Assembly: GCF_902459465.1 (NCBI RefSeq)
Contig: NC_047065.1
Span: 16,864,001-16,928,000, forward strand
DNA from: Asterias rubens
Taxonomy: Eukaryota
Direction of reading: 5' to 3'
Length of the DNA: 64,000 nucleotides
Shown here: positions 43,901 to 55,289 of the stretch, one piece after another
How the letters are laid out: each line of letters starts with the position of its first letter
Numbering within the stretch: position 1 is the stretch's first letter
Notes under the pieces: model-generated
What the model was told of the DNA's origin: nothing
Database searches by the model: none
The model's input: only the letters and a program-made list of their open reading frames with translations
Made by a program: the position numbers and the translations under genes

Positions 43901-46900
43901 TGACTGGCATTCGCTGGCCAACACGAAATGTGTTCCTAAACAATGAAGTTTATCAAAATAAAGTCACGACTTTTAGACAAACTAATAATCGTGTAGTCAA
44001 ACCAAAGTACAGTACAAAATGTGTACAAATTACTTTACAAAGCATTTGACGTGAGGTTTTTGAAAGGGAAACAAATATCTGGCTAAATAAATCTACTTTT
44101 AAGTTAATACATAATCAACGTTTCTTTTTAAAACGAGGCATCTTGACAGTCAACCAAAACCACAGCAACAGGGCACAATCTCTGGATCATTATACCTAAC
44201 GTTTAATACACTACTGGGTACCAGTTGTTGTGTAGTACCAGTTCATCTCAACTGTCAAAAGAATACAATACCCAATTGTTACGCAAATAACAGTTGACAT
44301 GAACTGCATAAACAGTTCAGACAGGTACCACCGATTTTAAGTAACAATATATCCTACATAAATATTACATTAAAAGTCAATACAATCCATAGAATCTTTA
44401 ATTTGAGGTAACAACAAGAAAAACTTATCTCTTGTAAAAATTCCATGAGTGGAAAAACAATTCAGTGCCAAAATTTCAAAATGTCAACCAGCTTTATAAC
44501 TTTGTTGGGTGCCAAAGTTCAAATGCGCGTGAGAATTGCACAATCTATTGTAAAAAAAACAGACAACAACTTTCTTACAGCCAAAACGAAAGAGGCATAA
44601 TTTTATTGCAAAATATTGGTAAATTAAGGCATACCTGGTCAGAAAAAAAGAAGTAAGTGGTTTACCTTCTTAGTTTGTTTTGCAAAAAATCTTGTGCAAA
44701 ACATGTATTACTCGATCCCATACAAATTATCTCCAATACCTTATATTGGATCCTCCCCAAATTAGAACCACAAAACAAACATACACCAAGTCCTCCAATT
44801 TTGGCTTGTGAAATGCTAATAATATTATTGTTTTTTAAAATCCTATTATCAAAATCATTGTCTGTACGCACAACAAAATATTTTAAGCTTGCCCTAAATG
44901 TAAGTATGAGTTGTAGTATACATAGTGTCCATACGTTATCGGGAGGAATGCAAAATTAAACAGGCAGTAACTCAAGGTTAGCCCCAAGGCTTTTTCAGGT
45001 TTTCCAGGGGCTTTTTAGCGTTAACTTTGAGCCCTCGAATTACCGCTGGTTTCCTTCTGCATTTCTCCCACAAATATTTTTTAAATACTGTGTTATTGAA
45101 GACAATGCACAAGTACTGCGTAAAAGAACTAAAAAATATATACAGTAAGTAATCTTCAAACCAAATTTTTAAATGATTACAATAAATAAAATGTGATAAA
45201 ACATAAATAAATAGAGACAAACGGGAGAATATATTGAGAGGATTTCTTACCGTCGCTGAGTTTCTTGACAGTCCAGACAGCGTTGGGATTACCTGGCAGC
45301 TCTGACACAGCCATTTCTGACACCTGGATTTCAAACGTCATCAAGAAATTAGTATCAAACAACAATAAACAAGATTTGATAACAGTTGGGTTTGAAGATG
45401 TTATCATTGCCAGGGTTCTCTCGAGGAGTTTTAAAAACTGGGACGTTATGCACCAAATATTTGTTATGCTTAGCCAAATTGAAACAAGGTCTTTGGAATG
45501 TTGTTCATCTTGGTTTTGAAAGCCCTACTTTGCAATCTGGAGTATTCTTATTGGTTATCTCTGGATTTCAAAACAATCGTCATCAATGAGTCAATATAAA
45601 ACAAAAATGAACAAGAGTTCGCCGAAGGATTTTTTTTATAAACAGTGAACCTAAGGTTTAGGATGTTTGGCCCAAGCCAGTAAAATGAAACAAGGTCTTC
45701 GGACTTTTTTCTACTTGGTGTTTATCTTGGTTTTAAAGTCCTAATGTGCCATCTGGAGCATTCTCCCTTGATTTTTTTTTTAATGCAAGTTCTTTTAGGC
45801 TGCAACGGCTGAAACTTGCAAGAATCAGCACGCAATTCACAGGGCAACTCTCGTACAGTTCCAGTGCAAGTCAAACTTGGATCAGATTATTGAGTGAAGA
45901 AAAGTATTCGGTTATAATCAGCGGCATTCATACGAAGCGCGAATAGGTAATCATCATCTCCATAGTTTGACTGCACTTGAAGTAGGGATGAAACTGGTTA
46001 TCAGCTAAAATCCATAAAGATAACAATGTTGCCACTGGAAATTGGCAAAGCAATAAATTTGCTTTGCAGTATTTTCTGCTTAACAGCTTTATGAAATTGG
46101 GCCCTGGTTGTATGCTTACTTGGATGAGTTCAGTGACCTTTGGTAAGTTAAGGGTTAACTATTCATGACCTCTCACATCTAAACCATAGATTGATTTCAG
46201 TGACCTATACACCTCTCTTAATATTTATGCATGAGGTACGTCACAATGCTAACTCAAAACAAGGCGATGGGCGCAGCCACTGCAAGTGATGGGGAACGTG
46301 CACCCATAGCCTCATTTTGGGTAAGAATTATGACTTCATGCATAAAAACTAAGAGAGGCGTATGGTAAGTAAAGGGGTTAACTATTCATGACCTCTCACC
46401 TCTAGACCATGACGGAGAACTCGAAGGGACGATCGGGGCCCTCTCCCTGAAGCAACGTACAGCTGTGGTGTATCTTCATTGGCTAAATCGGCAATCTGCT
46501 CATCAGGAAGGTCAAGCATAAACAAAAGAAAAAACATGAGCACAAAAATGTAAAACCTGTTTATTATCCCTTAAACAGTTGCAAAGTAAATACCTGATGC
46601 GCAAGAATCTCGTTTTAACAAGATTCCATTAACAAGATTCCAGTGCAAGTCATTCTTGGATCAGATTATTGAGTGAAGAAAAGTATTCGTTATAATCAGC
46701 GACATTCATACGAAGCGCGAATAGGTAATCATCATCTCCAAAGATTGACTGCACTTTAAGTAGGGAACGATGTGGGCACTAACTACGCAGAGAAAAACCT
46801 TTCAATGCAAACCTTCACAATGGCAGGACTTGGATTCAAATACCAGGTTAACTACTCTAGTAGTATGCCTGCGGATTAACTTTGTTCTTTTTTTATGTAG

Positions 46901-49551
46901 GTGAAAAACCTAAATAATAATATTCTTCATCTCGATTCAACTATGACATCTATTAAAAACTTAAAATAAAGCAGTTGAAGTTTCACCATGATTCAGGCAT
47001 GATATTGGAAAAAGTGGGCATATTTTGTTGAGTAGATGGGCTAACTTGACAAATGGTGAAGACTTTTTAAGCCTGATTAATAAAATAAAAAAAATCAGAT
47101 TTATCCAAGGCAAAAACTGTCTGAAAACAGTCTTAAGTAGGAAGAAAATCACAAGTACCGGTACTCTTACCTGGCAGCTCATGATTGGAGATAAGCTTTC
47201 CATCTGATCAATCTCCACCAGGTTCTTGAGGGAGCGAGGAGCAAAGAAGAAAGTGTCTCCTTCCTCCAGGGGCATGGCACTACTGAACTCCGGTTCATCG
47301 TCGTCATCCCCGAGATGGGCAATCTGGTAGAGGTAGCTGCAAGACGACAACAAGAGAAAGGGAGGATAAGATTTCTAGATTGGTAAAGGTTGCTGGTTCG
47401 AATCCAACCCAAGTAAAATGCCTGTGTATTTTGTTTTTCCACAGAACACGAGGAAAGTACTAAGTATACAGTGCTTACACACATTTAAAATAAGGCCTGG
47501 GCCCAATTTCAGTGAGCTGCTAAGCAAAAAAATTTGCTTAGCATGAAATTGTTGCTTTGATAAAAACAGGATTACCAAACGAATTTCCACATGATTTCAG
47601 GATTTATCAAATAATAGCTGAACACCAGTAATAAGCGAAATGCAAGAGATTGAAACTTGGTTGGTAATCCTGTTGTTTTTTTTTCAAGGAAGAAATTTCA
47701 TGCTAAGCAAATTTTCGTGCTTAGCAGCTCTATGAAATTGGGCCCTGGTTAAAAGACGTATTGTGCTTCAGTGCAGTTCAATCTTGGATCAGAACATTAA
47801 GTGAAGAAAGTAATTTGAGTATAATCAATGGCTTTTCATACGAAGCGCGAATGGTGTGTCATCATTTCCAAAGATTCACTGCACTTCATTAGAGGTACCC
47901 ATTGGGTGCCCTTTACCCAGGAGAAAATGCCTTGGTGCCCTTTTCTTTGGTGCCCTTGCCATTTCAAAAACGAAGCATACAGGCCTGCCCTTACCAAATA
48001 ATTTAATACAGGACACTCCTTGGGTTAATTACTAAAATAACGACAATATTTAAACAACTCTGAACTCACTGGTTCCCGAATTCAGCAGCCAAAAACAGGA
48101 AGCCAGTTTTAAGGACGTTCATGCTGGTGGCGATGGGGACCGTGTCAAAGTACTTCATACGGACTTCGGTGACCATGTCCTCGTCTGTCTCAAGGGTTAT
48201 CTTGAAGATGTCTCCCTGCTCCGTCTGAGCCAGGAAGAAGAACATCGACTGTAGAGAAAGAGATTGAAAGGTTTGTGGTAATTCATTGATTATAAGTATA
48301 ATGAAACCTATGAAGATCGTTCACATTTGCATTGAGTACTAATATTTCTTAAACTTTCCAAGAAAGAACAAATTAAAATCGATACCAGTCAATGCAGTTC
48401 AACTCAAGATCAGATAATTATGTGAAGAAAGTTATTTGAGTATAATCAATGGCTTTTCATACGAAGCGCGAATAATTTATCATCATTTCAAAAGTTTGAC
48501 TGCATGTGACTAGATCATCTGATTGACAGAACATCATTTGTTCATGGTCGGATTTGAATTTCCCATAATCTATTCAACTTCCTCGAGCGACAACACCAAA
48601 TTCTGGAACTAATTACGAGTAACCTTGTTGTCTTTCTTTTGTAAAGGCATGGTTTCATTATGGACAACAAAATTTTCACACGAAATTGATTACTCAAAGT
48701 TCTGTGGCAGGGTGGGAACGAAACTTGATTTAAAAATACTGACACGAGACACGATTGGTAATCAGGTTTTTCCCCATGCACAAGCTACTGTATCCGGCCG
48801 ATACGAACCAAGTTTATACAAGCAAATTCATTTGTTTCCATACCTTTGTTTTATGAGTTGCACTGCATACGAAGATCATCCCCCTCTCTGGATCGTCAAG
48901 ATCATTCTGTTACAGAAAGGAAAACAATTAAATAAATACAGAAAACTATTCAAATGGTTTAGAATTGTCATTGGATGATTTACAAGCATGAAGTTTATAG
49001 TATGAAACCCAAATATAATTCAGTTTCCTCCTGAGGAAAATCAGAGCAAATTGATCGAAACGTCAATCTGTGAAATGTCAATGTTACAGCACTGTTTCTG
49101 TTCAAAATAATCACAACTCAGTTTGAGAGTGTTCCTGTCCAATGGTGTTACCATAAACTTTAGTAGAAAATATTTATAAAACCTTGCCCCAATCTCAAAT
49201 TTCTTTCCTTATTGGCATTAAGAAATTTTCTTTTTAAAGACTTTTAGAGAATGTTTGCAGTTCAACCTAGGATCAGATTATTGAGTGAAGAAAAGTATTC
49301 GGTTATAATCAGCGACATTCATACGAAGCGCGAATAGGTAATCATCATCTTCATAGATAGACTGCAGTTGATATTAATGCATTTGAACGATCCCTCTGCT
49401 CAACTAGTCTGCCCCCATCTGAGGGGCATTGCACTTACCCTTCGTCTGGGGATAGGCATTCTGATGTCCGGTTGGTCACCCAGATTCTTGTAGGTAATAT
49501 AATTCTCAGAGCATATCAGCACACCACTAGGACCATCACTGCCTCCAGGTA

Positions 49552-49586
<35 letters not shown>

Positions 49587-52500
49587 TAATAATTTAGGAG
49601 GCTAATTATCATTATTCACAGCTGAGAAGCCGAATTGTGAAGGATGCAGCTACAACTCATTTGAGCTGCAGGCATGCAGGGGCACCTTCGGCAGTCAGCC
49701 ACATTTACCAATATACGACCATGGAGCACAGCCAGAGATCCAAAGCATTTCATTTTTTTTTTTCAAGAGGAAGGAAAACTGGAAGGCCCGATAACCAACA
49801 CACAACTCTACTCACATACATGTATGACCTTTGAACAAAGACAACAGAGGCGAGAGGGAAGCACTTTACGCACAAGCCAGCCATGCCACCCCAATAATTG
49901 AATAGAACATAGAAATTAACAGATGGAGGCTTCAGGTAGAAGGAAGATTTCCAGAAGGAAGATTTCCAACCTGTGTGAGTTTGGATCAGTACTTTAAGAA
50001 TGTTAATCACGATAATCAGCTGAAACACGGATTAAAGTACAATCATCATTTCCAAACTGATGAGAGTTTCTGAACCAATAATTGACGTCAGCCCATCACC
50101 ATGGTAAAAATAAACAGATAACATATTATTAACATTCTTCCAGGTCATTTTCGGCAAATAAAAGCAGTCAATTTAAACAGCGTGTTACTCAGGCATGATA
50201 TTTGACCCTTGATAAAAAGGAGAAACATTTTCTTGAGTACAAGTGCTGACCTACATATACACATGGAATAGGCTTTTAAAGGGAAGGCACACGTTTGGTA
50301 ATTACTCAAAACAAATATTAACTTAAAAACTGACTTGGTAACTAGCATTGGCGAGCTGATGATAGTATAAAAGATTGTGGGAAACGACTCCCTCTGAAGT
50401 AACGTAGTTTTTGAGAAAGAGGTGATTGCTCACTTAAATAATAAAAGACTTCTTGCTAGAAGTCTTTTATTCCCATCTGAAAGCACACAAATTCGTCCAA
50501 CAAGGGTGCTTTTCTTTCATCATTTTCTCCCAACTCCAATGACCAATTGAGTTCAAATTTTCACAGGTTTGTTATTTTATGCTTCTAAATGTTGAGATAC
50601 AATAAGTGAGAACACTGGTCTTTGACAATTACCAATAGTGTACCTTCCCTTTAAAGACTTTTCAGGCTATTTATTCAACAAATTTCCAAGGGCGAAACAA
50701 TTATGAAATCAGAAGAATATCATGCCAGGTGGCGATTTCTAAAAGAGCTAAGAATTATATTAGGTGCTAATCAATCTTTACATGTGATGACACAATACAA
50801 ATCACTATGGCAATTTTTTATTTATTTTTTTATTTATTTTTTATTTATGCAAGTTGCCAGATACACAAGGCCTGAAGGCCACTTCAAGGTGTGGGCTACA
50901 AATTTTTTCAGAGGCCGTTGCCACCTACTCCTAGGGCTGTAACAGGGTTACCCCTTTTACCGTCCATACGGATGTAGGCTTGGGTATCATCAATCCGAAG
51001 CCTGGTGTTTTGTGAAATAGAGCCCTGGTTATTCATGCTGGTCCTCTACTTTGGAATAATCTGCCTCTTAATATCCGTAACATCTTTTCCTAAGTTCAAA
51101 GAGGCCCTCAAAACACACTTTTTCACAGCTGCTTTTTATTAATTTTGGAGTTTCTTCCTTGCGCCATGAGCATCACTTGTGGTGGATACCGGCGCACTAA
51201 AAGTGTTCTTATTATTGTTATTAAATAATGTGAAATTGAAAGCCAAATAATACTGACCAGCAATGAGGAAATTGCCATGTTCCTCGAGTGCTTCACTGTA
51301 CTTCCTGACAACGTGGTTAAGCCCCAGGTCTAGCTCGTAGTATGTCAGCATCTGCTGGGTAGCTGCCGCTGCTTCACCGGTTGGATCCGAATCGCCCTCC
51401 TGAGTTATCAAGTTTTAAGAAAAATGCACAATAGGGTCAGATTGCAGGGAGTAATGCCACCTGGCTAAAAGCAGAAAATTGAGGAGGTCTTCAGTTATTC
51501 CAGTCGTATTAAACCATTTGTCATAAGACAGTCCCCCCAAAAAAATGGCACATAAACTGACACAAAGTGGTTAAAACCCTAACCCCTTGAAGATTATAGC
51601 TGGACACTAGCCCAATACCCAACATAATCCAACAGCATAGGGTAAAGATTTTGGAGAATACATGATAGTAAGGGTAAAGGAAAGTGATGCTTTTTAAAGT
51701 GCAGTTGGTTGGATCAGAAAAAAATAGTGAAGAAAATATCTTGTTAAAATCACAGAACATTCATACGAAGCGCGAATAGTTTTTCATCATTTCCAAAGAT
51801 GTGCTGCACTGGTAAAATTATAATCTCAACCTCTTCCGTCTCACTTCCTCCAACCTCCTCTATAGCCTCCTAGAGTCTTTGATATGTGCTCTATAAATTT
51901 TCCAGGGGCTAGAGTCATTGTTAACAAAACAGTCTGAAACTATAGGACCCAAACTTAGGAGGTTTTAGGAGGCGTACGTTGAAATTATGACATTTCCGCA
52001 TTTTGGTAAACCCTGTGGTTTACGTTCACAGACCTTTTTTAGGAACAGTGTTCTAGGAACTAGAAAAGTAGAATAAAGAGCAATATTTCTTAATACAATG
52101 TGGACAAAATAATGGCTGATTTTCTTCACCAGGCTGACCTAAAAAGTCTGAATTCAGATAAAAGTCTGAAAGTCTGATCCCTGCATCTGCACAGCACACA
52201 AAGCTTTAAATCTCACTCACCTCATAATCGATCTCGAGACAGGCAAACATGGGATTCTCAAAGCCGACGTCCACGCCCACAATGTGATAACAGAAGGTGC
52301 TGGACTTGTGTGCCTCCAGCGGGGACGAGATGGTCAGCCTGGCCTGAGAGTCACGGTTGAGGATGTAGACCAGCTTCTGCTTCTCAATGGCTGCGATCAT
52401 GACGGCGCGACCCTTGGGGTCAACGGCCATGAGCTGACCGGGTACGATGCGGCGGCAACCGCTCTTCCCAAACGTCTCTTGGTGAACCTTCAATATCAAA

Positions 52501-55289
52501 TGAATATTTTGTTATTGTGGGTCGAAATCAGGGCCCAATTTCATGGCTCTGCTAACCGTAAACACAGAATCGGCGCTTACGGAAGCAGGGAATTCTGTGC
52601 TTACGGCAAGCATATGTCATGGGTTAGCGGCGAATTTGGGCTTCTGCACGTGCGTACTTCACGTTACTAGGTATTCTACGCTTACAAGGCTAGCGCAGAA
52701 ATTCGGCGCTTGCATGTAAGTGGGGAATCGCGATCGTAAGCGCAGAATTCGGCGGTAAGCAGAGCTATGAAATTGGGCCCAGGTGGTCTCACAAAAGATG
52801 AAAGTAAAAACATTTATCTGCAAATAGACATTTGCCATAATCATGGAAACTTGACGAACTTATACTTATGAAAACCCTAAGCGGCTTCGCCTTCTCGAGG
52901 CTTTGGCCAAGACTCTCCTGGTTCCTTCAAAATACCGTACTCTGTGGTAACTTATAGCCAAATGTTTGGACTTGGACAAGATTAGGTTCTTAGGTACAAT
53001 ATGTTTGTTTTTCAGAGAGAGTGGGAAGACCAAAGTCAACCAAACATGGTAGTCTTGGTTCAATCTTTCTTTATTCTACAAAATGTACTTTTGATCTCAA
53101 AAGAAATCAATATTTAAAACAAAAGTATTGTTTTGAGTGCAGTTTTTTTGGATCAGAAAAAAATTGTGAAGAAAATATTTTGTAAAAATCACAGAATATT
53201 CATACGAAGCGCGAATAGTTTTTCATCATTTCCAAAGATATGCTGCACTGGTAAAATTATTGAGTACGAAATCAAGAATCTCGACCTCTCCACTTGCTGA
53301 TCACTACTCTAACCATCCGCACCACACAACGCTTGAAATCCTAGTCACCTCATAATCGCTGAAGTGCGCAAATGTGTTTCCTTCCGGCGTTAAACCAATG
53401 TTTGTGGGACAAAAGTGGTCCCCAAAATGTTTGATCAAGCAAAAACTTACACGATTTATATTAAGTAGGATTTGAAACTTTGCATGGTGGAAGTAAGATA
53501 TAGAAAAGTTTGCCGGAGTCTATCGCATTCCATGCGAATGTGGTAAGGTTTATGTCGGGGAAACCGGGCGTAACCTTCCCACTAGACTTAAGGAACACCG
53601 AGCACACGGAAGGAGGGGGGACTTCGATAAATCCGCCATCGTCAAGCATTCCCACATCACTGACCACCAAGTGAACTGGGAAGCAGCAGAAATCATCGCT
53701 CCAATCCAGGCGTGGCACCCTAGACGCATCAGAGAGGCCATAGAGATCCACAAGCATGACACCGTACCCCAAGACATCGGCTTCCACATCAGCGACATCT
53801 GGCTCCCCCTTCTCCCGACCAATGGATCTTCTATATCCACGGTCACCCCCTAGGCCCCAACCATTAGACTGCTTTGGGTCATCTATACCCTCAGTCACCT
53901 AGGCCCCACACCCTCACTATCCCCTGTGCTTGTTCCTACTGACACGGTTCAGTGAGCACACACCACCCTAGGCTCCCTAGGCTCCACCCTAGGCTCCACA
54001 ACAGGTTCACCACGCATCATCGAGTTCACTTCCCGCCTCTATTTCCCGCCTTCATGCATCACCGCTGATCCACCGCCCAGTACTTAAGCAGCATGCAGCA
54101 TCAGAGTCCAGCATTCTCCAGAAGACGATCAGAGCATACTGATCGAAACGTCGAGTTAATCCAACGGTTCTTTTCAGAACCACCCCAACTCATTGAGAGA
54201 TTGTTATTACATGGTGTTACCGCAAACTTTTCTATACGATTTATATTGCAATGTGAAAGTTATTTCTTCTCTGAGATTGCCTGGAACTGGTTGCCAGTAA
54301 CTTGCCTAGTGTGACATGCCTCTCGGAGTCATTCAATACTTACCCTGTCAAAAGTGTTCTTGGCCGGGTTGTACTCCAGGATGCAAATACGCCCCGAATC
54401 GGTACCAACCACGATATAATCTGCCAAAAACAATAACATTAAAGATGTGAAGGATGACAAAAGGTCATTTGAATCACAGGGATTTCGTCCAGCAATTTGG
54501 CATAACAAACAATATAGACTGAACTTATTTTATGCACACATGATATTTTAGTAACAATTGATATCTTTTGTGTAGCATTTCGCTTGGCTATACAAGGGAC
54601 ATTGCTCACTGCATCTTTTGGTACAATTGAACTAGAATCAACTACAATACCCAGGACCAGGAGTGAGAGTCATTGCTGACAAAAAAAAGTTTGAAACTGG
54701 GATACAAATTTTATGAGGTTTATGTGGTTTAGATTTCACTGAGCTTTTAGTTCCAAACAGTGTCCACAGCAATAGAGAGATAGATCAAAGAGCAGGAGTT
54801 TTTGAATTGCTGCCTTTCTTCACCAGACCGACATAAAGTCTGAATTTAAATAAAAATAAATGGCAGGCCTGAAATTGAGAGGACAAGTCCATTTTCATCT
54901 TGCAAAAGTCTATGGGAAACATTTCGAAGGCAGACCAAGGGCCAAGACCAGCAGGGTAACAGAGGCCATAGCCACCGTGGTCTCTGTTTATTTTCAGGCT
55001 TGCAATGCATCAACGTAACTTCAGCAAGTTAAACTAGCCTTTCCAGTCTTCCCAAGGATTTACCTTTGCTCCCTCCAGTAAGCTTGAAGGCCATCAACGA
55101 ACGGATGATCCCAAAGATCTCGTACGTAAGCACGGCATGGAGCTTGCCGGTGTTGGGATCCAGCTTAAGAAGCTCAAGGGCCTTCCCTCGGGCCACAACG
55201 ATCTCCTGCTGCTTCGTCCCGGCGAAGTTGCCATGGATAGCTTGCACGACTCCCGTGGCCCTCTGGAGGGTCAGTGAATACAGAAACAT
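28789..55289 (-). CDS. SF3B3: Splicing factor 3B subunit 3 (SAP130), complete, 26 coding exons, 1216 aa
   Basis: Exons: 55064-55289, 54344-54420, 52221-52487, 51258-51399, 49439-49551, 48844-48906, 48070-48248, 47171-47336, 46400-46495, 45251-45323, 41083-41234, 40483-40587, 40096-40146, 39573-39728, 37248-37388, 34924-35046, 34567-34721, 33754-33928, 32882-33087, 32426-32582, 31989-32114, 31356-31568, 30527-30769, 29763-29867, 29048-29143, 28789-28833. All GT-AG and phase-compatible, 3651 nt in total. [12 protein letters not shown]...[14 protein letters not shown] matches SF3B3. An acceptor AG immediately before the start implies a non-coding exon 1. Confidence 0.98.
35605..37115. mobile_element. 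Non-autonomous DNA transposon with 14-bp TIRs and an apparent 5-bp TSD (hAT5-like)
   Basis: CAGGGAACGATTTC at 35605 versus GAAATCGTTCACTG ending at 37115; GATGT on both flanks; TTGCAT(A/C)GCAA subterminal repeats at both ends. Confidence 0.55.
37874..38403. mobile_element. hAT-type MITE, 530 bp
   Basis: TIRs TAGTGCTGGGCGAAT / ATTCGCCCAGGCCTA; perfect 8-bp TSD GCATGTAC (37866-37873 and 38404-38411); internal ATATCCG/CGGATAT repeats. Confidence 0.88.
38825..39126 (+). mobile_element. tRNA-derived SINE (MetaSINE-like core); related copy at about 63555-63870; other tRNA-head SINE fragments near 28470-28570 (-) and 34300-34370 (+)
   Basis: A-box TGGCCGAGTGG and B-box GGTTC(A/G)AATCC, followed by the GAGCAAGA(T/C)ACTT..CTCT(T/C)CACC(C/T)AGGGGT..ATGGGTACC core. 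The 63.6-kb copy ends in an (ATT)n tail. Confidence 0.7.
39127..39312. other. Assembly gap (N run) in SF3B3 intron 14
   Basis: 186 N bases. Confidence 1.
45878..45961 (-). ncRNA. Box C/D snoRNA paralogue 1 (SF3B3 intron 9)
   Basis: Box C ATGATGA (45957-45951), guide TATTCGCGCTTCGT, D' ATGA, C'-like CTGATTA, TTTCTTCAC, box D CTGA (45885-45882); flanking inverted stem. Confidence 0.85.
46657..46739 (-). ncRNA. Box C/D snoRNA paralogue 2 (SF3B3 intron 8)
   Basis: Box C 46735-46729, box D 46664-46661, same guide and D'; near-identical to paralogue 1. Confidence 0.85.
47499..47747. mobile_element. MITE family C (GGGCCCAATTTCA...TGAAATTGGGCCC), Harbinger-like; relatives at about 11305-11552, 29280-29508 and 52531-52782, with half copies near 30810-30965 and 46030-46105
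   Basis: Inverted termini and recurrent GCTTAAGCA/GCTTAC internal motifs in several dispersed copies. Confidence 0.7.
47785..47869 (-). ncRNA. Box C/D snoRNA paralogue 3 (SF3B3 intron 7)
   Basis: Box C 47865-47859, box D 47792-47789, guide ATTCGCGCTTCGT plus ATGA, TTTCTTCAC, external stem. Confidence 0.85.
48406..48490 (-). ncRNA. Box C/D snoRNA paralogue 4 (SF3B3 intron 6)
   Basis: Box C 48486-48480, box D 48413-48410, same guide. Confidence 0.85.
49269..49352 (-). ncRNA. Box C/D snoRNA paralogue 5 (SF3B3 intron 5)
   Basis: Box C 49348-49342, box D 49276-49273; near-identical to paralogues 1 and 2. Confidence 0.85.
49982..50053 (-). ncRNA. Box C/D snoRNA, SNORD32/SNORD51 (yeast snR39/snR59)-like guide (SF3B3 intron 4)
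   Basis: Box C ATGATGA 50049-50043; guide TCCGTGTTTCAG followed by D' CTGA; C'-like GTGATTA; box D 49989-49986; perfect 8-bp flanking stem AGTTTGGA/TCCAAACT. The guide pairs with 28S UUGAAACACGGA. Confidence 0.8.
51710..51794 (-). ncRNA. Box C/D snoRNA paralogue 6 (SF3B3 intron 3)
   Basis: Box C 51790-51784, box D 51717-51714, same guide and D', TTTCTTCAC. Confidence 0.85.
53149..53233 (-). ncRNA. Box C/D snoRNA paralogue 7 (SF3B3 intron 2)
   Basis: Box C 53229-53223, box D 53156-53153; near-identical to paralogue 6. Confidence 0.85.
53515..54160 (+). mobile_element. 5'-truncated Penelope-like retroelement: GIY-YIG endonuclease C-terminus plus 3' tail
   Basis: In-frame 53515-53853: [28 protein letters not shown]...SAIVKH...HQVNWE...RRIREAIEI. 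The tail holds a hammerhead-like motif at 54116-54155. Confidence 0.88.

What the first reader, a model, noticed from the sequence alone, without database searches (positions are those of the whole stretch)
45928..45945. The amplified guide predicts a 28S 2'-O-methylation site I do not recognise from human or yeast
Seen: guide UAUUCGCGCUUCGU directly upstream of D' AUGA. Established: the conserved LSU segment GUGAAGAAAUUCAA(U/C)GAAGCGCGGGUAAACGG lies just 5' of helix 69, and methylation occurs opposite the fifth nucleotide upstream of D/D'. The guide can form a 14-bp duplex with A(C/U)GAAGCGCGGGUA including G:U pairs. The predicted target is the second A of GAAGCGCG; by my count that is about A3716 in the numbering where U36C targets A3703 and SNORD87 targets G3723. 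I recall no human or yeast Nm there. Inference: a lineage-restricted rRNA modification near the intersubunit bridge region.
Basis: partly seen in the sequence, partly recalled or inferred. Interest (0 to 1): 0.75.

Follow-up and report, generated by a model that had tools for sequence, protein, structure and literature searches.

The report
Sea-star U36-like snoRNA, new rRNA site
Seven introns of a sea star's SF3B3 gene each carry a copy of a normal-looking box C/D guide RNA that should methylate an adenosine in helix 68 of large-subunit rRNA, a site missing from every methylation map I could check; this is a credible but untested prediction of an ordinary kind.

Summary
UAUUCGCGCUUCGU followed by AUGA lies on the minus strand at 45928-45945. 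It sits inside a complete box C/D snoRNA (C box, D', C', D, closing stem) found in seven SF3B3 introns.

The boxes, the guide and a second 9-nt element (UUUCUUCAC) are invariant across the copies, while the spacers have drifted to 31-62% identity.

On real eukaryotic rDNA from metagenomes, the guide's only full match is A(C/U)GAAGCGCGGGUA. The second element's only perfect match is GUGAAGAAA, 4 nt upstream.

The box D'+5 rule puts the methyl group 13 nt 3' of the universal U36 site. That is human A3737 (older numbering A3716), yeast A2233, fly A2611, Arabidopsis A2234. None of the maps read lists it: human, yeast, Drosophila, three plants, Dictyostelium.

Plant U36 pairs with the same two rRNA segments and methylates G2237, only 3 nt away.

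The second element lies 8-9 nt from box D, so it most likely acts as accessory pairing rather than as a guide.

Three things were not obtained: the species' own 28S, evidence of expression, and evidence of methylation.

The scan's earlier notes on this snoRNA array are on this same window, not on other DNA. Interest is moderate to low.

The parts
45868..45972 (-). Copy 1 of the box C/D snoRNA, with its closing stem; this is the copy the finding points to
   Evidence: The covariance model scores it at 117 bits. The fold gives a long closing stem that brings boxes C and D together, z = -3.9. Sub-threshold Rfam hits are to ceN30 and snoU36a.
45951..45957 (-). Box C, AUGAUGA
   Evidence: Invariant in 7 of 7 copies.
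45932..45945 (-). D' guide UAUUCGCGCUUCGU, complementary to LSU rRNA A(C/U)GAAGCGCGGGUA
   Evidence: Identical in 6 copies; one copy has U to C at the distal end. It has a unique best site on proxy rDNA. Duplex energy is -22.3 kcal/mol for the CG type and -20.5 for the UG type.
45928..45931 (-). Box D', AUGA (non-consensus first letter); GUAUGAA is invariant in all copies
   Evidence: The alternative CUGA at 45918-45921 is present in only 3 of 7 copies and overlaps box C'.
45915..45920 (-). Box C', UGAUUA (UGAUUU in copies 6 and 7)
45894..45902 (-). Conserved element UUUCUUCAC, complementary to LSU GUGAAGAAA (the U36 target segment). It lies 8-9 nt from box D and is read here as accessory pairing.
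   Evidence: Invariant in 7 of 7 copies while the flanking spacers are 54-62% identical. Its only perfect Watson-Crick site on the proxies is 13 nt upstream of the guide site. It forms together with the guide duplex in a cofold.
45882..45885 (-). Box D, CUGA
   Evidence: Invariant in 7 of 7 copies.
46647..46750 (-). Copy 2
   Evidence: 115 bits.
47775..47880 (-). Copy 3 (guide begins with C instead of U)
   Evidence: 116.5 bits.
48396..48501 (-). Copy 4
   Evidence: 115.5 bits.
49259..49363 (-). Copy 5
   Evidence: 114 bits.
51700..51805 (-). Copy 6
   Evidence: 109 bits; snoU36a 29.8 bits.
53139..53244 (-). Copy 7
   Evidence: 111 bits; snoU36a 29.5 bits.
47171..55289 (-). Part of the host gene, SF3B3/RSE1 family. 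Confirmed exons are 47171-47336, 48070-48248, 49439-49547 and 51258-51401. Exon ORFs lie at 52209-52499 and 55032-55289.
   Evidence: A 5368-nt contig of run X1, with no differences, splices these four exons. Pfam Beta-prop_RSE1_1st matches three exon peptides. Relatives are named splicing factor 3B subunit 3.

Best explanation
This is a family of seven intron-encoded box C/D snoRNAs, one per SF3B3 intron, released by splicing and assembled into fibrillarin snoRNPs. The 14-nt guide upstream of box D' pairs with LSU rRNA A(C/U)GAAGCGCGGGUA in helix 68. By the D'+5 rule it directs 2'-O-methylation of the second A of GAAGCG. That A lies 13 nt 3' of the universal U36 site and corresponds to human A3737 (older numbering A3716) and yeast A2233. 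The second invariant element, UUUCUUCAC, pairs with GUGAAGAAA 4 nt upstream on the rRNA. It is too far from box D (8-9 nt) to guide methylation, so it most likely acts as extra base pairing that clamps the substrate, with the C'/D' motif looped out between the two duplexes. The layout matches plant U36, which binds the same two segments, so the family is probably a U36 relative whose two guides have shifted register. Shown here: the anatomy, the selective conservation and the complementarity to eukaryotic LSU rRNA. Inferred: expression, methylation, the accessory role and the U36 ancestry.
For: All boxes are present and invariant; the guide is 98% and the accessory element 100% identical between subgroups, while spacers and flanks are 31-69% identical. 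A long closing stem forms, z = -3.9. The copies sit in introns of a spliced, conserved gene. The guide's only 14 of 14 site on six proxy rDNA contigs is the expected one, and the accessory element's only perfect site lies next to it. Pairing is continuous from position 1 to 10 with G.U pairs only at distal positions 11-12, which meets the criteria found for mapped Arabidopsis sites. Extra pairs in Arabidopsis are 7-15 bp and a median of 30 nt away in the snoRNA, often in the other spacer. Here the extra pair is 9-10 bp, 28-30 nt away and in the other spacer. The two duplexes form together in a cofold at -36 kcal/mol. Plant U36 methylates A2221 and G2237 with its two guides on this same stretch. 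The snoU36a model gives the best clan hit, up to 29.8 bits.
Against: The species' own 28S was not obtained. The two letters opposite guide positions 2-3 vary among eukaryotes (CC 49, CG 14 and TG 3 of 113 loci). A CC-type rRNA would put a mismatch at position 3 and weaken the duplex to -16.3 kcal/mol. D' is AUGA, not CUGA. There is no evidence of a discrete small RNA, because the reads laid were contigs dominated by repeats. There are no methylation data. All Rfam hits are below gathering score. A relative with about 80% exon nucleotide identity has no copy in the two orthologous introns, so conservation beyond this species is not shown.
Confidence: 0.6

Rival explanations
1. The snoRNA binds this rRNA stretch but does not methylate it. 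The non-consensus D' (AUGA) and degenerate C' (UGAUUA/UGAUUU) may not position fibrillarin. In that case the two conserved complementarities act only as a folding chaperone or clamp on helices 67-68 during 60S assembly.
For: Neither conserved element sits next to a consensus CUGA; the D-proximal 8-9 nt vary between copies. The two segments pair together over 24 bp in total. No Nm is known at this position in any map read.
Against: Degenerate D' boxes next to active guides are documented in Arabidopsis. The guide abuts AUGA exactly, with pairing from position 1, and GUAUGAA is invariant in all seven copies. That pattern is what a measured D'+5 register predicts and is more than a mere clamp would need.
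Confidence: 0.15
2. The family methylates a different nucleotide. One option is the plant-type G (+16), if the effective D' register is 3 nt upstream. The other is the universal U36 adenosine (position 0), guided by UUUCUUCAC with the 8-9-nt spacer before box D looped out.
For: Plant U36 methylates both of those positions from the same two rRNA segments. The U36 site is conserved in fly, human, yeast, Arabidopsis and Xenopus, yet no other U36-type snoRNA has been noted in this genome so far.
Against: CGUA, which would be the plant-register D', is a worse box than AUGA. No mechanism is known for skipping 8-9 unpaired nucleotides next to box D, and the spacer varies in length (8 or 9 nt), which would move the site. 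Few of this genome's snoRNAs have been surveyed, so the lack of a second U36 says little.
Confidence: 0.1
3. The copies are recent intragenic duplicates with no function of their own, or the guide serves a target other than rRNA.
For: All seven lie in one gene. A relative lacks copies in two orthologous introns. Expression is not shown.
Against: The three subgroups have diverged strongly in spacers, loops and flanks (31-69% identity), yet every box and both rRNA-complementary elements stay intact. That is the signature of purifying selection on exactly the functional parts. The match to rRNA is unique and extends over two adjacent segments.
Confidence: 0.05

Closest known systems
Plant U36 / U36a (Rfam RF01302 snoU36a, clan CL00051); Arabidopsis 25S Am2221 and Gm2237
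   Same: It is a box C/D snoRNA whose 5' (D') guide pairs with AAGCGCGGGUA and whose 3' element pairs with the GAAGAAA segment of the same rRNA stretch, in the same order, so both can bind at once. It gives the best clan hit for copies 6 and 7, at 29.8 and 29.5 bits.
   Different: Scores are below the gathering score of 45. The sea-star D' is AUGA and lies 3 nt further along the guide, so the predicted target is A(+13), not G(+16). The 3' element lies 8-9 nt from box D, so it cannot place the U36 adenosine at D+5; in plants that pairing starts at position 4. Gm2237 is listed only for plants and Ostreococcus.
Animal and yeast U36: SNORD36A/B/C, yeast snR47, Drosophila snoRNA:CD18
   Same: All are complementary to GUGAAGAAA, the segment holding the universally conserved Am (human Am3724, yeast Am2220, fly Am2598).
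   Different: In those snoRNAs the element abuts box D and guides the methylation. Some of them, human U36A/B and yeast snR47, are also listed as guides for 18S Am668/Am619. Here the element is displaced and the other guide targets LSU. No separate hit to SNORD36 was listed; clan competition keeps only the best member.
SNORD87 (human 28S Gm3744)
   Same: It targets the same helix-68 strand, 7 nt 3' of the predicted site.
   Different: It is a different nucleotide and, as far as I know, a vertebrate family. There was no Rfam hit.
Caenorhabditis ceN30 (Rfam RF01626)
   Same: It is the best single Rfam score for copy 1 (29.1 bits), sharing the boxes, an AUGA D' and short runs in the guide and after C'.
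   Different: The score is far below the gathering score of 65. The ceN30 consensus guide has no conserved site on 113 eukaryotic LSU loci, so a shared target is not supported. I treat the hit as similarity in boxes and composition.
Extra (accessory) snoRNA-rRNA base pairing, described in yeast and catalogued for 45 of 104 Arabidopsis sites
   Same: It is a second duplex of 7-15 bp, usually in the other spacer, about 30 nt away in the snoRNA and next to the primary duplex on the rRNA. Here it is 9-10 bp, 28-30 nt away, with a 4-nt gap on the rRNA.
   Different: Here the accessory element looks like a former guide, the U36 antisense element, kept invariant in seven paralogues. Its effect has not been tested.

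Membership tests
Box C/D snoRNA (class) | Box C RUGAUGA near the 5' end and box D CUGA near the 3' end, brought together by a terminal stem | tested here: met
   AUGAUGA and CUGA are invariant in 7 of 7 copies. The closing stem is seen in the fold, z = -3.9.
Box C/D snoRNA (class) | Internal D' and C' boxes with a short loop between them | tested here: met
   AUGA, then 7-8 nt, then UGAUU(A/U). Both boxes are degenerate but conserved.
Box C/D snoRNA (class) | At least 9 contiguous base pairs with rRNA directly upstream of box D or D' | tested here: inconclusive
   Met on proxy eukaryotic LSU sequences of CG or UG type: 14 of 14 pairs at a unique site. The species' own 28S was not available.
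Box C/D snoRNA (class) | Accumulates as a discrete small RNA bound by fibrillarin, NOP56, NOP58 and SNU13 | not testable with these tools
   Only contigs could be laid, and these cannot show small-RNA ends or levels.
U36 family (Rfam clan CL00051: SNORD36, snoU36a, snR47) | Reaches the gathering score of a clan member's model | tested here: not met
   snoU36a scores 19.1-29.8 bits against a gathering score of 45.
U36 family | An antisense element that places the conserved A of GUGAAG five nucleotides upstream of box D | tested here: not met
   UUUCUUCAC is present but separated from CUGA by 8-9 variable nucleotides in all copies.
U36 family | A second guide to 18S Am668/Am619 (animals, yeast) or to the G of AAGCG in LSU (plants) | tested here: not met
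   The D' guide's best site is the LSU segment, not 18S. Its register gives A(+13), not the plant G(+16).
ceN30 (RF01626) | Gathering score and a shared target | tested here: not met
   29.1 bits against 65. The ceN30 guide has no conserved LSU site.

The most novel reading that the evidence does not exclude
The family descends from U36. The ancestral box-D guide has been uncoupled from box D and kept purely as a non-catalytic clamp. The D' guide now installs a methyl group on a helix-68 adenosine that no mapped organism modifies. This would mean either that the two-segment grip on helices 67-68 predates the split of plants and animals or that it arose twice. It would also raise the question of whether sea stars make the otherwise widely conserved U36 methylation by another guide or have lost it.
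Probability: 0.25. Interest if true: 0.55.

Novelty: new member of a known kind. Interest (0 to 1): 0.35.

Why it matters
If the adenosine is methylated, it adds an echinoderm-lineage site to helix 68. That helix takes part in an intersubunit bridge and in E-site contacts. In under 45 nt it already carries lineage-variable methylations: human and Arabidopsis -6, universal 0, plants +16, vertebrates +20, widely conserved +36. Among the invertebrate maps I found, only the Drosophila map covers this part of 28S; the planarian map found did not resolve it. The seven paralogues also form a clean natural experiment. They show selection holding an rRNA-complementary element that cannot act as a guide, which supports the idea that accessory pairing is a selected feature of snoRNAs. 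Lineage-specific snoRNA targets are common, however: Drosophila alone has eight unique sites. The practical value is therefore as an annotation and a testable prediction, not as a new principle.

Tried and rejected
1. My first metagenome pattern had the wrong spacing (14 N instead of 12) and found nothing. The second scan, with a variable gap, worked.

2. The species' own 28S could not be obtained. The window holds no rRNA, no eukaryotic genome collection is on hand, and read laying accepts only window sequence.

3. I tested ceN30 as a homologue and rejected it. The papers that define ceN30 are not held.

4. Reads gave no expression evidence. The runs are contigs and the stretch is dominated by high-copy repeats. 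Only the host exons were confirmed.

5. I tested conservation in relatives with an exon peptide search, then contigs, then the covariance model. The closest contigs with DNA, at about 80% exon nucleotide identity, span two orthologous introns and hold no copy and no Rfam snoRNA. Three longer contigs came without DNA.

6. I considered the CUGA inside copy 1 (45918-45921) as D'. It is rejected because it is present in only 3 of 7 copies, overlaps C', and would make the guide a non-conserved stretch.

7. Supplementary tables of the Arabidopsis and Drosophila papers gave nothing usable.

8. The planarian map did not resolve this part of 28S.

Full report
**What is there.** The finding's 18 bases (45928-45945) read, on the minus strand, UAUUCGCGCUUCGU followed by AUGA. 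With up to two mismatches the 14-mer occurs seven times in the window, all on the minus strand between 45.9 and 53.2 kb. Shuffles give 0.12 expected.

Each occurrence lies in the same frame, in this order:
- box C, AUGAUGA
- 5 nt
- the guide
- AUGA
- a loop of 7-8 nt
- UGAUU(A/U)
- 11-12 nt
- UUUCUUCAC
- 8-9 nt
- box D, CUGA

Flanking sequences close into a long stem, z = -3.9 against shuffles. A covariance model built from the seven copies finds exactly these seven in the window and nothing else.

**Host gene and organism.** The copies lie in consecutive introns of a minus-strand gene.
- Three exon peptides match the first beta-propeller of the RSE1/DDB1/CPSF1 family.
- Their relatives are named splicing factor 3B subunit 3.
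- A 5.4-kb contig from a public run, with no differences from the window, splices four of the exons.
- Earlier notes of this scan call the genome a sea star. I did not test that.
- An eighth, unrelated C/D snoRNA of the SNORD18/SNORD126 type sits in one more intron.

**Is it under selection?** The seven copies fall into three subgroups. Between subgroups the pattern of identity is as follows:

| Part | Identity between subgroups |
|---|---|
| Boxes C, D', D and the UUUCUUCAC element | 100% |
| Guide | 98% |
| Box C' | 90% |
| Spacers, loop and flanks | 31-69% |

This is the pattern of a working guide RNA, not of decaying duplicates.

**What it pairs with.** The species' own 28S could not be obtained, so I fetched 113 eukaryotic LSU rDNA loci from metagenomes, anchored on the flanks only.
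- The segment reads GUGAAGAAAUUC-AA-XX-AAGCGCGGGU-AAACGG.
- The two letters XX vary: CC in 49 loci, CG in 14, UG in 3, and others. The core is AAGCGCGGGU in most of them.
- On six long proxies the guide's only 14 of 14 site is A(C/U)GAAGCGCGGGUA, with 11-12 Watson-Crick pairs. The two G.U pairs fall at distal positions 11-12.
- The only perfect site for UUUCUUCAC is GUGAAGAAA, 13 nt upstream of the start of the guide site.
- Duplex energies are -22.3 kcal/mol (CG type), -20.5 (UG type) and -16.3 (CC type, which puts a mismatch at position 3).
- The guide's G-C at positions 2-3 therefore predicts a CG- or UG-type 28S in this animal. That is a prediction, not a result.

**Which nucleotide.** AUGA is the only conserved D'-like box. 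GUAUGAA is invariant. The CUGA further on exists in three copies only and overlaps C'. Counting five from AUGA gives the second A of GAAGCG.

I fixed the register with published sites rather than from memory, taking the universal U36 adenosine as position 0.

| Position | Site | Guide |
|---|---|---|
| 0 | Human Am3724, yeast Am2220, fly Am2598, Arabidopsis Am2221 | U36 |
| +16 | Arabidopsis Gm2237 | U36 |
| +20 | Human Gm3744 | SNORD87 |
| +36 | Human Am3760, yeast Am2256, fly Am2634 | U46 type |

Only the second A of GUGAAG as position 0 makes +16 a G, and it also makes +20 a G and +36 an A on the proxy sequence. The predicted site is +13.

**Is it known?** None of the maps read lists it:
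- Human has Am3718, Am3724, Gm3744 and Am3760 in this stretch.
- Yeast, tomato, tobacco and Ostreococcus have nothing at +13.
- Arabidopsis has nothing at +13.
- Drosophila has nothing between Am2598 and Am2634.
- Dictyostelium has nothing before the +36 site.
- No held paper mentions Am3737 or Am3716.
- I did not check trypanosomatids, Euglena, ciliates or other invertebrates, so 'unknown anywhere' is not established.

**Closest relative.** Its two antisense elements bind these same two rRNA segments and methylate A2221 and G2237. [quoted passage not shown] The plant snoU36a model is the best clan hit for several copies, up to 29.8 bits, below the gathering score of 45.

The sea-star RNA differs in two ways:
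- Its D' box lies 3 nt further along the guide, so it reads A(+13) instead of G(+16).
- Its 3' element is 8-9 variable nucleotides away from box D, so it cannot put the U36 adenosine at D+5.

The best single hit for copy 1, Caenorhabditis ceN30 at 29 bits against a gathering score of 65, does not hold up. The ceN30 guide has no conserved site on any of the 113 loci.

**How it most likely works.** Intron-encoded snoRNAs are released by splicing and trimmed back to the snoRNP; this is established knowledge and was not tested here. The D' guide forms 10 uninterrupted pairs from position 1, plus 4 more with two G.U pairs. This meets what was found for mapped Arabidopsis sites: at least 9 contiguous pairs, with G.U tolerated at the ends.

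The UUUCUUCAC element forms 9-10 further pairs with the rRNA 4 nt upstream. On the snoRNA side the two duplexes are separated by 28-30 nt that hold the D'/C' motif. Arabidopsis extra pairs are 7-15 bp and a median of 30 nt away, often in the other spacer. A cofold predicts both duplexes together at -36 kcal/mol.

I therefore read the element as accessory pairing that holds the substrate for the D' site. It was possibly derived from a former U36 guide. That ancestry, and the accessory role, are inferences.

**Conservation outside this genome.** An exon-peptide search followed by contig look-ups gave contigs from relatives with 93-95% peptide identity but only about 80% exon nucleotide identity. 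These contigs span the introns orthologous to those of copies 4 and 5. They hold no copy and no other snoRNA. The amplification through SF3B3 introns is therefore not shared at that distance. Whether those species carry the family elsewhere is unknown. Longer contigs came without DNA.

**Limits.** There is no species 28S, no evidence of a discrete small RNA and no methylation data. D' and C' are non-consensus. The E. coli equivalence (about A1890 in helix 68) is from my own memory.

**Verdict.** This is a new member of a known kind, with a modestly interesting twist, namely a U36-like two-segment grip with a displaced and still conserved second element. Interest is 0.35.

**Operators' rules.** Nothing here looked human. 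The host gene was searched exon by exon, and the joined spliced model was left out.

Noticed in passing
window 49979-50057 (-): An eighth, unrelated box C/D snoRNA lies in another SF3B3 intron. Its guide is AAUCCGUGUUUCAG followed by CUGA. Rfam scores it as SNORD126 at 40.2 bits (gathering score 55) and SNORD18 at 27.7 bits (gathering score 41). It looks like the U18-type guide.
   Followed up: partly
window 54161-54205 (+): A histone 3' UTR stem-loop reaches Rfam's gathering score (34.3 bits). It lies inside the SF3B3 region, and I saw no obvious histone ORF among the ORFs listed upstream.
   Followed up: no
window 52544-52613 (-): A hairpin just upstream of an SF3B3 exon gives a sub-threshold match to the mir-785 precursor model (32.6 bits, gathering score 62).
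   Followed up: no
window 46000-46400, 47400-48000, 50200-51000: These intronic stretches attract very many contigs at 90-95% likeness in all four runs laid, so they are high-copy repeats. They hide any signal from nearby snoRNA copies.
   Followed up: no
L022, L023, L066 (metagenome LSU loci): In three CG-type LSU loci the rRNA sequence is interrupted right after UCUCUUAA in helix 69-71. This looks like an insertion, perhaps an intron, at that conserved place.
   Followed up: no
window 45928-46053 (-) and 47836-47997 (-): The 5' half of the snoRNA reads as an ORF tail ending ...[10 protein letters not shown] and a stop (box C to D'). Gene callers may therefore list spurious small proteins over such snoRNA copies.
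   Followed up: no
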